From: Octopus sinensis
Taxonomy: Eukaryota
Length of the DNA: 64,000 nucleotides
Reading direction: 5' to 3'
NCBI RefSeq assembly: GCF_006345805.1
Contig: NC_043018.1
Location: 26,288,001 to 26,352,000, forward strand
Of the stretch, positions 6,714 to 27,594 are shown piece by piece. The notes under the pieces are model-generated. The model ran no database searches. It was given only the letters and a program-made list of their open reading frames with translations, and was not told where the DNA came from. The position numbers were made by a program, and so were the translations under genes. Each line of letters starts with the position of its first letter. Position 1 is the stretch's first letter.

Positions 6714-6743
6714 TTGTTCCAATGAAGAAGGAGACTATAACAG
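6714..6743 (+). CDS. Candidate 30-nt coding microexon A (phase 2/2), peptide CSNEEGDYN
   Basis: Long pyrimidine tract 6672-6703, acceptor TTTCAG (AG 6712-6713), donor AG|GTCAGT (6744). The frame-preserving exon is open and paralogous to 27562-27594. Confidence 0.65.
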
Positions 6744-6758
6744 GTCAGTATTCATCAT

Positions 6759-6817
<59 letters not shown>

Positions 6818-7269
6818 CTATACTTTCTTTATAATTATTTTTTGCTATACTTAATAATAATAATAATAATAATAATAATATTAATTTAATGATTATATAC
6901 ATATATATAATTATTTTAAAGGAAAAAGTCAAAACAAGCCTTATCTCCTCCATACTGAATTAATGTCCAAGCATTATGAAGCTGCCGAAAAAACTCCATA
7001 AATACATGTGACTAAAATAGTCATATATATATATCATTATTAATTTAATATATAAATTGCTTTTTTCCATGCTGACCATGATTTTTATTCTTATTTTATA
7101 AATAATAATAATAATAATAACAGCAATAATAATAATAACTAGTAATGGCTTCTTGTGTAGGCACAGGATTTGAAATTTGGGAGTGGCATAGGGACTGGTT
7201 GATTACACCACCCTGGTACTTTATTTCATCGACCCCTGAAAGGATGTAAAGCAAAGCTGATCTCTACGG

Positions 7270-7530
7270 CAGGTGGCGCTGGCATCATCCATGTTCAGAT
7301 GGTGCTTTTTACATGCCACTGGCACGGGTAACTTAACTACAATTTCCATTTGATTTTTATTTTGATGTTGGTGTTGACGTACTTCACTCAATAGGTCTCC
7401 TCAAGAACATTGGTTAGCAAGATCCAAGGTTAGCACAGCAGGCCGTCCTGTGAGCCATGAACTCACTTCATTTGTCGGGTCTTCACAGTCACAGCATATC
7501 TCAGAGGTCTAGGTCTTCATCATTTCCTCT
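7270..7530 (-). mobile_element. RTE-clade LINE 3' fragment (decayed ORF2 C-terminus plus 3'UTR)
   Basis: The minus strand gives a frameshifted GLTEEM..DL.RYAVTVKTRQMK*, like the RTE C-terminal DRxxWRxxV motif, followed by UTR carrying GGCATGTAAAAAGCACC. Confidence 0.55.
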
Positions 7531-7538
7531 GTGAGGCC

Positions 7539-7540
<2 letters not shown>

Positions 7541-7574
<34 letters not shown>

Positions 7575-7823
7575 GTAATAATAATGCTAATAATAATAGC
7601 AATAATAATGATAATAATAATAGCAATAATAATGATAATAATAATAATAATGATAATAATAATAATAATGATAATAGCAATAATAATGATAATAATAATA
7701 ATAATATAATAATAATAATGATAATCATAATAATAATAATAATAGTAATAATAATAATTACAATAATAATAGTAATAATCGTAATAATAATAATAATAGT
7801 AATAATAATAATAATAATAATAA
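7541..7823. repeat. (AAT)n compound microsatellite
   Basis: Read directly. Confidence 0.95.
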
Positions 7824-23969: not shown

Positions 23970-24040
<71 letters not shown>

Positions 24041-25183
24041 GTGTGTGTGTTTGTATGTATTGATATACACATCTTTGATGAGAATCTGTACAGATTCAGC
24101 TTATCAAAAATTTCAACTCAGAAGACATTTGCTCAACCCAAGGCTATAGTGGAACCCATTTACTCAAGCTGCTGGGCATTGGGTTTGAACCTAGAACCAT
24201 AGGGTTTTGAACCCACCAAACGTCTTAACTACACAGCCATGACTTCTATTTGAATCCATTTTGGTGTTTACCGTCAACCAATGTCTTCACATCCGCTGCT
24301 TCTCCATAATTGTGCAATATTTGGTTAGCATATATTTCCTTTCTTATTTTCTATATTTTTATCTTTATTTGTCATATTAAGCACTTATCAGCAATTTTCA
24401 TTGCTATATCTTGTGATAGAGATGAAGAAATCAATGCTTCTTCTTCGAAATCATGTTCCGTCATCTGTAAATTCCGTCGTGAATTCATTGCAAGCATGCA
24501 AAACAAAACTGACAGCATCAGCTTCATTTGTTTGGTCACAGCCGTGATCATTTGCCAGTTCTCTATATATTGATTTCTCCATTCCTCACTAGCTAACAAA
24601 TTTTCATATACATCATATATATATATATATATATATATATGGATTTCATATTCTGTCTCTGCATCAATATTTTTTTCTGTTCTTTATTTGAAATCTAATG
24701 AAAACAAAGGCATGTGCAAAGAATGCGAATTTTCTTATATTGCATGAAGTTTTTTTAATAAATTTTAACATTTTTTATTGTATCTACATTTATATCATGT
24801 GTGTGTGTATATTTATATATACACATATATATATATATATGCACACGCACATACACACATATATATTTTGTACGTATGTGTAAATATGTGTAGTATTATT
24901 TGTAAGCTACAACAATGCAAGGAAGCGCATTGTGATCAGCAGTTTATAACAATGTCTAATAGTCTGGTCAATACAGTAATAGACTAAGATATATATGCAT
25001 ATATTGATGTGTGCGTGTTCATATTTAAAAAAATTTAGCAAAAACACAGCAAACACAAAATTTTTGCAAAAACATAAAAAGAAAATTCATGGTTAATCCC
25101 TCGTCAGTCAATGTCAAAAAGATCATTACAATTTCATGCCTTTGTATCCGTGTGCCTGTATCCATATATAAATATTCATATAT

Positions 25184-25217
<34 letters not shown>

Positions 25218-26629
25218 CATATATACACACATATATTCATAGATACATATATATGTGTATCCATATAATGTATGTATGTGTGTATGTGGTGAAAGTGTGT
25301 ATCATTGTGATTAATGTGTTCAACTCATGACCATAATGCCATGAGTTCAATCTTTGGATCAAGTAGTGCATTGTATTTTTTTTTTTTTGAGCAAGGCACG
25401 TCATTTCACATTACCCCAGTCTACACTGATGAGAATGTGTTGCCACTGGCTGCTTGTGCATCAAACCGTCCCTCCAACTGTTACATACTGCTTGTGCCAC
25501 AGCATGGGAAGGTTTGAGAGTCTAGAATATATCTGTGTGCTTGTGACTATGCAGGCACCTAAAGCAATTTCTGAAAGCATTGTACATATTACCAATCCAT
25601 ACTTGCTTGCAAGTGATGGCTGGCACTTTTTCAGAGTAATAATGTGATGCACAAGCACTCAGTTTTGAGTGCACTACATCTTTTAGCAGAAACAGCTGTA
25701 AGCTAATGCAGTTCATAATGTAACAATTTCATAATTTCTTGTAACTTTGTTATTAATTTAATTTCCCTTTATGCTCTGTACTCAGCACTTTACTTTGAAG
25801 CATATGAATTCTAACACCAGGTTGTTTGTATTGATATGCCTAAACAATACATATTTATATATATATACATATATATATATATATTTGCAGTTGTGCGAGT
25901 AAACAAATTAGATATATAATATATATAATAATAATAATATGTGGGAATAAATATTATTCCAAACTTACAGGGAAAAATTCAATTTAGAAATACTAAATCA
26001 AATTTCACAGAATATAATATATATATATATAAATTAGAAAGCAACCACCTTTTATCAATTCAATAATGAAAAATTAAATTATAGAAAAATTACATATTAT
26101 AGAAAGATTAAATATAAGATAAAACATATAGCAATGATTAAGTAATATGCTAAATATTAAATGAAATGTATAAATTTGGTAGAATAACAACACATGTTTC
26201 ATGGCTATATTTAAGAAATGATAATATATATGAGAATATATATTTTAAAATATTTCGTATTTTACAAGATTATTTACGTATAATTATTAATTTATTTAAT
26301 TAACTATTTTATTGCTTTTGTCTTTAACCTGAAGAGTGGCTATATTTATATTGAAGTGATTTTACTATTATTATTACTATTGAGGTCAACTTTGCTTTTC
26401 ATCTCTCTGTGGTTGGTAAACTAAGGTACCAGTCATATGCTGGGTGAGGGGGCAATGTATATTCCAAGCACAGCATGGATGTAAGTGACATTTTGAAAAA
26501 GTTGGGTCTTGGTTATTTTTATTAAAAAAAAATGTCAGTCATTTGCTGTTGTTTGATTTCTAATTTCAAGCATTTGAGTTCAGATTCTCACTTTCCCTTT
26601 CCGTCACTTTTAGCTCTGTCTCTCTTTTT

Positions 26630-27048
26630 CTCTTACTCACACACACACACACACACACCAGAGTCTCTCTCTCTCTCTCTCAGCACACTTGCATATAGTC
26701 TATCTCTATCTCTCTATCAGACGCAAACACAATCTTCTCTCTCTCTCAAAGACACACACAAACACACACACACACACTCACACACAAACACACTCACAGA
26801 CAAACACACACACACACACAAGAGTCTCTTTTTCTCTCTCTCTCAATCAGACACAAACACAATCTTCTCCCTCTCTCTCTCAAACACACACACAAACACA
26901 CACACACTCACACATAAACACACACACACACACTCACACATAAACACACACACACAAACACACACACACACAAGAGTCTCTTTCTCTCTCTCTCTCTCTC
27001 TCAAACACACACACAAACATACACACAAACACAAGCACACACACAAAC

Positions 27049-27079
<31 letters not shown>

Positions 27080-27385
27080 TACACACACCTGTGTGTGCAC
27101 ACTCTTCAGCATTTTGCTGTTCTTAACTATAACTTTCAAACATTTAGATTTTAGTTAACGCTCAGCATTTGCTCCTCTCTCTCTCTCTGCCACTCCATCT
27201 CTCTCTCTCTCTCTGCCTCTCCATCTCTCTCTCTCTGCCTTTCCATCTCTCTCTCTGTGCCTCTCTATCTCACTCTCTGCCTCTCCCTCTCTCTCTGCCT
27301 CTCCATCGCTCTCTCTGCCTCTCCATCTCTTCTTTGCCTCTCCATCTCTCTCTCTCTGTCTCTCCATCTCTCTCTCACCCTCTCA
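26630..27385. repeat. Compound (CA)/(CT) microsatellite and CTCTCTGCCTCTCCAT-type minisatellite
   Basis: Read directly; CAAGAGTCTCT-bounded blocks repeat. Confidence 0.9.
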
Positions 27386-27561
27386 CATACACATAATACA
27401 GAGAACCACATCAAAATAAATACATGGCCCTTTCCATTTCATTTACCAATTTCCAAGTGTTTCTTACAGGGAAAACCATTGCAGAAAAAAAAAAAAAAGA
27501 CAAAATAATTTCTTTGCACGTTGATTCATTTCAACAATTTGTCTAATTCCTTACTTTCCAG

Positions 27562-27594
27562 TTGTTCCAATGACGAAGCTGATGATTATAACAG
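27562..27594 (+). CDS. Candidate 33-nt coding microexon A' (phase 2/2), peptide CSNDEADDYN
   Basis: Branch-like CTAAT at 27543-47, acceptor TTACTTTCCAG (AG 27560-61), donor AG|GTTCGT (27595). Paralogous to 6714-6743. Splicing to 47309 gives AG+T = Ser and keeps the frame. Confidence 0.65.

What the first reader, a model, noticed from the sequence alone, without database searches (positions are those of the whole stretch)
6714..27594. Duplicated paralogous microexons 21 kb apart (CSNEEGDYN vs CSNDEADDYN)
Seen: cag|TTGTTCCAATGAAGAAGGAGACTATAACAG|gtcagt (6714-6743) and cag|TTGTTCCAATGACGAAGCTGATGATTATAACAG|gttcgt (27562-27594). Similarity is confined to the exon while the flanking introns are unrelated. 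Both are phase 2/2 and frame-preserving, and both join in frame to exon 47309. Differences include synonymous-type changes and one whole-codon indel, as expected under coding constraint. Inference: mutually exclusive or promoter-coupled microexons in a probable neuronal gene, which gene predictors would likely miss.
Basis: partly seen in the sequence, partly recalled or inferred. Interest (0 to 1): 0.75.

Follow-up and report, generated by a model that had tools for sequence, protein, structure and literature searches.

The report
Duplicated coding microexons in octopus unc-13
Two tiny related exons 21 kb apart are real coding exons of the octopus unc-13 (Munc13) neurotransmitter-release gene, but deposited octopus proteins contain both side by side rather than as alternatives, so the finding is correct yet ordinary.

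Summary
Both sequences sit at the stated coordinates with AG/GT splice sites, and similarity is confined to the exon. The gene is unc-13 (Munc13 orthologue) of an Octopus species. The window holds only three of its coding exons: microexon A (6714-6743, 30 nt), microexon B (27562-27594, 33 nt) and a 193-nt exon (47309-47501). The last one encodes the helix at the position of the calmodulin-binding site.

Deposited proteins from Octopus vulgaris, O. bimaculoides (Unc13, UVH70864.1) and Argonauta hians all read ...QDYS-CSNEEGDYN-S-CSNDEADDYN-S-PVNS.... Both microexons are therefore joined in tandem, in frame, to exon 47309. Cuttlefish proteins, a cuttlefish-like RNA-seq contig and gastropod orthologues go straight from QDYS to PVNS.

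Best reading: a tandem exon duplication older than the Octopus-Argonauta split, seen so far only in octopods. It adds a 21-residue acidic Ser/Tyr insert (net charge -7) to the disordered linker about 50 residues before the calmodulin-site helix.

"Mutually exclusive" is contradicted by these records. "Promoter-coupled" has no support. "Missed by predictors" is only partly true. Whether the exons are ever skipped could not be tested here. The exons are already in public records, so interest is low.

The parts
1..6713 (+). 3' part of the intron upstream of microexon A. The preceding canonical exon (...SLNVSRQSTQDYS) lies outside the window.
   Evidence: tblastn of octopus, cuttlefish and limpet unc-13 proteins finds no upstream exon in the window. 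A polypyrimidine tract and cag precede 6714.
6714..6743 (+). Microexon A, 30 nt. Encodes (S)CSNEEGDYN(S). Acceptor tttcag|, donor CAG|gtcagt.
   Evidence: Sequence. The peptide is present in O. vulgaris P0020/P0022 and O. bimaculoides P0026. Argonauta P0021 has CSNEDGDYN.
6744..27561 (+). Intron between microexons A and B, 20,818 nt, rich in microsatellites and SINE-like repeats.
   Evidence: Coordinates; repeats. No unc-13 coding match inside it.
27562..27594 (+). Microexon B, 33 nt. Encodes (S)CSNDEADDYN(S). Acceptor ttccag|, donor CAG|gttcgt.
   Evidence: Sequence. The peptide is identical in O. vulgaris, O. bimaculoides and Argonauta proteins. It is also spliced to the next exon in O. bimaculoides model A0A0L8G322.
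27595..47308 (+). Intron between microexon B and the calmodulin-site exon, 19,714 nt.
   Evidence: Coordinates. No unc-13 coding match inside it.
47309..47501 (+). Canonical unc-13 exon, 193 nt: (S)PVNSRISSADVSRQSTQDYSDAAAPPPTDLPYEEKETEKRTELPSPARNRWIDAIQKVCSQLGD. It is a disordered acidic/Pro stretch followed by the helix at the position of the calmodulin-binding site. Donor GAC|gtaagt.
   Evidence: The exon is 100% identical to O. vulgaris and O. bimaculoides proteins, 84% to cuttlefish and 58% to Patella. The AlphaFold2 single-sequence model has a helix at residues 45-62 (SPARNRWIDAIQKVCSQL) with pLDDT up to about 93 and no secondary structure elsewhere.

Best explanation
The window lies inside the unc-13 (Munc13 orthologue) gene of an Octopus species. 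It covers the region that encodes the linker between the N-terminal C2A domain and the calmodulin-binding helix.

Microexons A (30 nt) and B (33 nt) are two coding exons that arose by tandem duplication of one short exon. The duplication predates the Octopus-Argonauta split. Their shared introns have since diverged completely and expanded to about 20 kb each.

Both exons are spliced in series between the upstream ...SRQSTQDYS exon and exon 47309. All junctions are phase 2, through a split AG|T serine codon.

Together they insert 21 residues, CSNEEGDYNSCSNDEADDYNS, with net charge -7. This takes the local run of '...DY(S/N)S'-ending units from two to four. The insert ends about 50 residues before the tryptophan of the predicted amphipathic helix.

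Shown: exon identity, order, frame, co-inclusion in deposited proteins, presence in Argonauta, and absence from the cuttlefish and gastropod sequences examined.

Inferred: the insert acts as an acidic spacer in a disordered linker, possibly controlled by phosphorylation. Each unit has one S-x-x-E site (CK2-type consensus) and one Tyr in an acidic context. On this reading it modulates how the C2A/RIM module and the Ca2+/calmodulin site talk to the C1-C2B-MUN core. It is not a folded element.
For: Gene identity:
- The exon-47309 peptide hits UNC13A_B_C of Acanthosepion pharaonis and 'protein unc-13 homolog B' of Patella.
- The cluster holds octopus Unc13 records.
- Pfam finds MUN, C1 and three C2 matches in P0026 and the order C2-C1-C2-MUN-C2 in the Argonauta gene.

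Co-inclusion:
- P0020, P0022, P0026 and P0021 all read QDYS-CSNE[ED]GDYN-S-CSNDEADDYN-S-PVNS.
- The spliced translation of the window is identical.

Lineage pattern:
- Six cuttlefish isoforms, an RNA-seq contig (L001...CAAGATTATAG|TCCAGTGAAT...), Patella (10 or more isoforms), Biomphalaria, Elysia and Plakobranchus have no insert.
- The gap in the octopus-cuttlefish alignment is exactly 21 residues, which equals 30 + 33 nt.

Duplication:
- The two exons share phase, CSN start and DYN end. They are 26/30 nt identical with one codon indel, and the similarity stops at the splice sites.

Constraint:
- 20 of 21 insert residues are identical between Octopus and Argonauta. The neighbouring exon has substitutions and a polyQ insertion.

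Context:
- The model shows no secondary structure before the helix at 45-62.
- A CaM-binding amphipathic helix N-terminal to C1 is described for molluscan unc13 (PMC9282427).
Against: - No octopus RNA reads or transcript contigs were examined directly. The octopus evidence is deposited protein records whose provenance (prediction or cDNA) the tools do not state.
- Genomic DNA of cuttlefish or squid could not be fetched, because the gene range is over 100 kb. Absence there rests on transcripts and proteins and could reflect skipping.
- DNA similarity alone is only borderline significant window-wide.
- The functional part (spacer, phospho-regulation, effect on calmodulin control) is untested inference.
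- The calmodulin-site identity rests on position, a predicted helix and the hydrophobic pattern. There was no PDB or Pfam match.
Confidence: 0.8

Rival explanations
1. The two microexons are cassette exons that are alternatively spliced. They would be skipped singly or together in some tissues or neuron types, so that octopus makes +21, +10, +11 and +0 forms of the unc-13 linker. This adds to the best explanation rather than replacing it.
For: - Microexons in unc-13 genes of other animals are regulated by cell type. Examples are the C. elegans 9-nt VLK exon between the CaM site and C1 (PMC12287369) and the mouse Unc13b 6-nt nSR100-dependent exon (PMC4387716).
- Both octopus exons are symmetric (phase 2/2, multiples of 3), so skipping is harmless to the frame.
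- The donors deviate from consensus at +3 (A) and at +3/+4 (B).
- Deposited O. bimaculoides and O. vulgaris proteins differ by other small inserts, so this gene is alternatively spliced elsewhere.
Against: - Every octopod record covering the junction has both exons.
- No skipped octopus form turned up in three database searches covering lengths 96-3433 aa. The database holds few octopus transcript fragments, so this is a weak negative.
Confidence: 0.3
2. One reading: the exons are mutually exclusive, so only one is used per mRNA.
For: Adjacent paralogous exons with the same phase and similar length are the classic signature of mutually exclusive exons (established knowledge of tandem exon duplication).
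Against: - Four proteins from three species contain both in tandem.
- Co-inclusion keeps the frame, since 63 nt is a multiple of three.
- The intron between them is 20.8 kb, so there is no steric block.
- Both exons have ordinary AG/GT sites.
Confidence: 0.04
3. Promoter-coupled use: an internal promoter in the long intron starts a C2A-less isoform that takes in microexon B but not A.
For: - Molluscan unc13 genes use intronic alternative promoters (Aplysia, PMC9282427).
- Patella isoform X8 has an alternative first exon spliced onto the PVNS exon.
- O. bimaculoides model A0A0L8G322 starts 14 codons upstream of microexon B.

The confidence of 0.05 is for coupling to microexon B specifically. 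An alternative promoter somewhere in this intron is more likely than that.
Against: - The start of that model is an intronic ATG that reads ACG in this window. It therefore looks like a truncated gene model.
- No homologue of the Patella first exon occurs in the window.
- In Patella the alternative exon joins the PVNS exon directly.
Confidence: 0.05
4. The two exons are not duplicates. Two unrelated intronic segments were exonised independently and converged on a similar acidic peptide, or the resemblance is chance.
For: - The core DNA similarity is matched by about 6 random pairs per simulated window.
- The linker is compositionally biased (D/E/Y/S/N), which raises chance similarity.
Against: - The relevant comparison is two neighbouring exons of one gene, not the whole window.
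- They share the first 12 nt, the last 8 nt, the phase, a whole-codon indel and both splice-site trinucleotides.
- No simulation reached the full alignment score.
Confidence: 0.07

Closest known systems
C. elegans unc-13 9-nt 'VLK' microexon (PMC12287369)
   Same: A very short in-frame exon in the regulatory N-terminal half of unc-13, next to the calmodulin site and in a linker rather than a folded domain.
   Different: - It is 9 nt rather than 30 and 33 nt.
- It lies between the CaM site and C1, whereas the octopus pair lies N-terminal to the CaM site.
- It is single, not duplicated.
- Its neuron-type-specific splicing and function are shown experimentally. For the octopus exons nothing is known about regulation.
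Mouse Unc13b 6-nt nSR100/SRRM4-dependent microexon (PMC4387716)
   Same: A neuronal microexon in a Munc13 gene that adds a few residues near a predicted kinase-docking or phosphorylation region.
   Different: The size, position (between exons 13 and 14) and lineage differ. Its dependence on SRRM4 is shown. The octopus exons exceed the 3-27 nt class defined in that paper.
Tandem exon duplication giving mutually exclusive exons (classic cases such as Dscam1 exon clusters; established knowledge)
   Same: Neighbouring paralogous exons with the same phase and near-equal length, with similarity confined to the exon.
   Different: Here both copies are retained in the same mRNA. The duplication lengthens a repeat-like linker instead of creating a choice.
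Alternative-promoter isoforms of molluscan unc13 (Aplysia Ac-unc13-A to -D, PMC9282427; Patella isoform X8)
   Same: The same gene and the same large intron region upstream of the calmodulin-site exon.
   Different: Those isoforms replace the whole N-terminus through a new first exon. The octopus microexons are internal exons of the C2A-containing long form.

Membership tests
unc-13 / Munc13 gene | MUN domain together with a C1-C2B module and a C-terminal C2 | tested here: met
   P0026 carries the window's three exons at 100% identity. Pfam finds MUN 948-1481 (E = 2e-193), C1 509-558 and three C2 stretches. The Argonauta gene has the order C2-C1-C2-MUN-C2.
unc-13 / Munc13 gene | The window's exons are part of the deposited unc-13 coding sequence | tested here: met
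   tblastn places 6714-6743, 27562-27594 and 47309-47501 at consecutive positions of P0020, P0022 and P0026. The spliced translation is identical.
unc-13 / Munc13 gene | Ca2+/calmodulin-binding amphipathic helix N-terminal to C1 | tested here: inconclusive
   A helix is predicted at SPARNRWIDAIQKVCSQL. Read by eye, W-I-V-L fall at positions 1-5-8-12, with a WW 27-28 residues later in the next exon. The published pattern is 1-5-8-10-(12)-26 (PMC9282427). There was no Pfam or PDB sequence match, and binding was not tested.
Microexon (strict class, 3-27 nt; PMC4387716) | Exon length of 27 nt or less | tested here: not met
   A is 30 nt and B is 33 nt. They qualify only under looser definitions (51 nt or less, from my own knowledge).
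Neural, SRRM4/eMIC-type regulated microexon programme | Tissue- or neuron-specific inclusion | not testable with these tools
   No octopus RNA-seq reads or junction counts are accessible here.
Neural, SRRM4/eMIC-type regulated microexon programme | UGC motif close upstream of the 3' splice site (from my own knowledge of the vertebrate code) | tested here: inconclusive
   The nearest TGC is at -60..-58 for A (6654-6656) and at -47..-45 for B (27515-27517). That is further than the usual proximal position, and the code has not been established for cephalopods.
Mutually exclusive exon pair | Adjacent paralogous exons with the same phase and similar length | tested here: met
Mutually exclusive exon pair | Never present together in one mature mRNA | tested here: not met
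   Both are present in tandem in P0020, P0022, P0026 and P0021.
Mutually exclusive exon pair | A mechanism that enforces exclusion: frameshift on co-inclusion, a too-short intron, or incompatible splice-site types | tested here: not met
   30 + 33 nt stays in frame, the intron is 20,818 nt, and both exons are AG...GT.
Tandem exon duplication | Two neighbouring exons of one gene with significant similarity confined to the exon and identical intron phases | tested here: met
   26/30 nt identity plus a codon indel, with unrelated flanks. None of 12 simulated windows reaches the alignment score. The exons are adjacent in the protein.

The most novel reading that the evidence does not exclude
The pair could be an octopod-specific regulated cassette module. 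Neuron types would choose 0, 1 or 2 acidic units just upstream of the calmodulin-binding helix of unc-13. That would tune Ca2+/calmodulin- or RIM-dependent vesicle priming and short-term plasticity. It would be a lineage-specific innovation in a core presynaptic protein of a large-brained invertebrate, parallel to the independently evolved unc-13 microexons of nematodes and mammals.
Probability: 0.2. Interest if true: 0.5.

Novelty: already known. Interest (0 to 1): 0.15.

Why it matters
The exons are already present in deposited octopus and Argonauta unc-13 proteins, so nothing new is discovered at the level of the gene. There are three modest points of value.

1. It is a clean example of a lineage-restricted tandem duplication of a very short exon. 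Both copies are kept in series, which lengthens a repeat-like disordered linker.
2. It adds a third lineage, after nematodes and mammals, in which unc-13 acquired tiny exons next to its calmodulin site. This fits the reported recurrent evolution of neural short exons in the same genes.
3. It flags annotation gaps. The O. sinensis RefSeq models read here lack this part of the gene, and the 2015 O. bimaculoides model is truncated inside the intron.

Tried and rejected
- Pfam and PDB sequence searches of the exon-47309 peptide found nothing. A longer peptide gave only chance PDB hits.
- A whole-window repeat search was swamped by microsatellites and did not help.
- tblastn of mollusc unc-13 proteins found no further coding exon in the window. 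The C2A exons and the exon after the calmodulin site therefore lie outside it.
- The length filter of the homologue search was circumvented by padding the query with X and scoring only residues 1-74. This is what reached the annotated proteins.
- Fetching cephalopod genomic DNA failed. The cuttlefish protein is not on record, the Argonauta gene is 224 kb and too long, the O. bimaculoides short model is not on record, and the window's own ORF is not on record. Presence of the microexons in decapodiform genomes, and conservation of their intron flanks, could therefore not be tested.
- The supplementary data of the Aplysia/Octopus synaptic paper, which hold squid unc13 peptides, are not held as text.
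- No alternative first exon like that of Patella X8 was found in the window.
- A transposon origin was considered and set aside, because the flanks share nothing beyond a T-rich tract.
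Full report
**Observation.** Microexon A is cag|TTGTTCCAATGAAGAAGGAGACTATAACAG|gtcagt at 6714-6743. Microexon B is cag|TTGTTCCAATGACGAAGCTGATGATTATAACAG|gttcgt at 27562-27594. Both are on the + strand. The downstream exon starts at 47309 after cag and ends at 47501 before gtaagt. In the frame set by a split AG|T serine codon it reads (S)PVNSRISSADVSRQSTQDYSDAAAPPPTDLPYEEKETEKRTELPSPARNRWIDAIQKVCSQLGD. The microexons read CSNEEGDYN and CSNDEADDYN. That is 26 of 30 aligned bases identical, plus one inserted codon. 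Their flanks do not align apart from a T-rich tract before the acceptor.

**Is the similarity more than chance?** Taken alone, the DNA similarity is borderline.
- The 17-nt core has 0.06 matches expected by chance in shuffles.
- A 35-nt query finds the other copy with E = 3e-4.
- When twelve order-2 Markov copies of the window were compared with themselves, about six pairs per window scored as high as the bare cag+exon+gt core (score 22 by my hand count).
- None reached the full alignment score of 28; the maximum was 26.

A reader scanning 64 kb should therefore expect some matches of similar core quality. The case rests on the coincidence with splice sites and frame, and on external evidence.

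**What the gene is.**
- A full HMMER scan with the exon-47309 peptide returned eleven short relatives. One (P0009) was later named unc-13 A of Biomphalaria.
- A search padded to full-length size hit UNC13A_B_C of the cuttlefish Acanthosepion pharaonis (84% identity) and 'protein unc-13 homolog B' of the limpet Patella.
- The 90% cluster of the cuttlefish protein also holds Octopus vulgaris, O. sinensis, O. bimaculoides (Unc13, UVH70864.1) and Argonauta hians records.
- Pfam finds MUN, C1 and three C2 matches in the O. bimaculoides protein.
- The Argonauta gene spans 224 kb with the order C2-C1-C2-MUN-C2.

The window is AT-rich and full of microsatellites and SINE-like repeats, as expected for an octopus genome.

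**The decisive result.** O. vulgaris CAI9738990.1 and CAI9738991.1, O. bimaculoides UVH70864.1 and Argonauta GAB1607815.1 all read ...SLNVSRQSTQDYS-CSNEEGDYN-S-CSNDEADDYN-S-PVNSRISSADVSRQ... Argonauta has CSNEDGDYN. Splicing the three window exons reproduces this string exactly. tblastn places the three exons at consecutive protein positions and finds no other unc-13 exon in the window. Both microexons are thus real, already annotated, and used together in series. Introns of 20,818 and 19,714 nt separate the three exons, and at least 6.7 kb of intron lies upstream.

**Lineage distribution.**
- All six cuttlefish isoforms go directly from QDYS to PVNS.
- So does a 2.5-kb RNA-seq contig from run SRR8281684. 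It encodes the N-terminus, C2A, the linker and the calmodulin-site exon. Its nucleotide junction is ...CAAGATTATAG|TCCAGTGAAT....
- More than ten Patella isoforms, plus Biomphalaria, Elysia and Plakobranchus, also lack the insert.
- In a global alignment the octopus-cuttlefish difference at this point is a gap of exactly 21 residues, which equals 30 + 33 nt.

The pair therefore existed before Octopus and Argonauta diverged. It is absent from the decapodiform and gastropod messages available. I could not check whether decapodiform genomes hold silent or skipped copies, because no genomic DNA could be fetched.

**How it arose and works.**
- *Origin.* The exons have the same phase, the same first 12 and last 8 bases and a whole-codon indel, and the similarity stops at the splice sites. 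This fits a tandem duplication of one short exon, followed by complete decay and expansion of the introns.
- *Constraint.* 20 of the 21 insert residues are identical between Octopus and Argonauta. The adjacent exon has several substitutions and a polyQ insertion.
- *Protein context.* The insert CSNEEGDYNSCSNDEADDYNS has net charge -7. It occupies residues 313-333 of P0026 and ends about 50 residues before Trp384 of RNRWIDAIQKV. C1 starts at residue 509.
- *Structure.* A single-sequence AlphaFold2 model of the exon-47309 peptide has no secondary structure in residues 1-44 (pLDDT about 57-60). It has a confident helix at 45-62, SPARNRWIDAIQKVCSQL. This fits the calmodulin-binding amphipathic helix described N-terminal to C1 in molluscan and mammalian unc13 (PMC9282427). 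That identity is inferred, not tested.
- *Local repeat.* The two canonical exons on either side encode an older repeat (SPVxSxxSSxxxSRQSTQDYS twice) that is shared with gastropods. The microexons take the run of units ending in DY(S/N)S from two to four.
- *Proposed function.* My reading is that the insert is an acidic spacer in a disordered regulatory linker, possibly phosphorylated. Each unit has an S-x-x-E site and a Tyr in an acidic context. This reading is inference.

- *Correct:* real paralogous coding microexons, phase 2/2, in-frame junction to exon 47309, and a neuronal gene.
- *Not supported:* mutual exclusivity. The deposited proteins have both exons, co-inclusion keeps the frame, the intron between them is long, and the splice sites are ordinary.
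- *No support:* promoter coupling. The O. bimaculoides 2015 model A0A0L8G322 does start 14 codons upstream of microexon B. Its start is an intronic ATG that is ACG in this window. No counterpart of the Patella alternative first exon is present.
- *Half right:* 'predictors would miss them'. The five O. sinensis RefSeq isoforms read lack the calmodulin-site exon, and the two tested have no match in the window. The old O. bimaculoides model has only B. Newer annotations have both.

**What remains open.** I could not tell whether either exon is ever skipped. Three homologue searches covering lengths 96-3433 aa found no skipped octopus form, but the collection holds very few octopus transcript fragments. 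Regulated skipping is plausible by analogy. The C. elegans unc-13 9-nt exon between the CaM site and C1 is switched by neuron type and matters for behaviour (PMC12287369). A 6-nt Unc13b exon in mouse depends on nSR100 (PMC4387716). I give cassette behaviour about 0.3.

**Comparison and verdict.** The thing is a member of the unc-13 gene. It is an example of tandem exon duplication with both copies retained. It fails two of the three defining features tested for a mutually exclusive pair. At 30 and 33 nt it also falls outside the strict 3-27 nt microexon class. It is already present in public records, and I found no paper discussing it. Interest is low. The residual novelty lies in possible octopod-specific regulation next to the calmodulin site.

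Noticed in passing
window 6763-6816: A (TA)n microsatellite of about 54 nt begins only 19 nt after the donor site of microexon A. A polymorphic repeat this close to a weak-ish donor (CAG|gtcagt) could affect splicing.
   Followed up: no
window 49664-49763: A run of exactly 100 N, which is an assembly gap, lies about 2.2 kb downstream of the calmodulin-site exon.
   Followed up: no
window 13826-15129: A minisatellite with a period of about 26-27 nt and roughly 50 copies sits inside the A-B intron. It creates long spurious minus-strand ORFs (MWHQHQCFLCGTSTSVFYV...).
   Followed up: no
window 12346-12738, 15046, 23677, 35344, 45426, 47739-48198, 49975 (family D20) and 6033, 11841, 22593, 23170, 48606, 53953 (family D16): Two dispersed repeat families (SINE-like, 67 nt or more, and 207 nt) have 13 and 6 copies. 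Several copies lie within 300-700 nt downstream of exon 47309.
   Followed up: no
window 27518-27561, compared with O. bimaculoides A0A0L8G322 (P0045): The 2015 O. bimaculoides model starts at an intronic ATG 14 codons upstream of microexon B. The window differs there at two codons (ACG for ATG, TCC for TTC). The window is therefore from another Octopus species or allele, and that model is probably truncated.
   Followed up: partly
outside the window: P0026 residues about 133-156 and about 452-463: O. bimaculoides Unc13 UVH70864.1 carries two further small inserts relative to the O. vulgaris model. One is an internally repetitive GYEDWEADWEARNWEARNWEGYED after C2A. The other is KFNTIFCIGVMK between the calmodulin-site helix and C1, the same position class as the C. 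elegans VLK microexon. These look like more short alternative exons.
   Followed up: no
window 47309-47501 and its upstream neighbour exon (outside the window): The two canonical exons flanking the microexon pair encode an older internal repeat (SPVDSHVSSLNVSRQSTQDYS / PVNSRISSADVSRQSTQDYS). It is shared with gastropods, so this junction has a history of unit duplication.
   Followed up: partly
Argonauta hians P0021, orthologue of window 47309-47501: Argonauta has a 15-residue Gln-rich insertion (ENEQQQQQQQPQQQQQ) inside the acidic stretch just before the calmodulin-site helix. The two microexon peptides next to it are almost unchanged.
   Followed up: no
O. sinensis XP_036368120-124 (P0017-P0019, P0023, P0025): All five RefSeq isoforms are 1226-1242 aa and lack the calmodulin-site exon. 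The two tested by tblastn (P0017, P0019) have no match in the window. The N-terminal third of the gene, including the exons studied here, appears to be missing from that annotation.
   Followed up: partly
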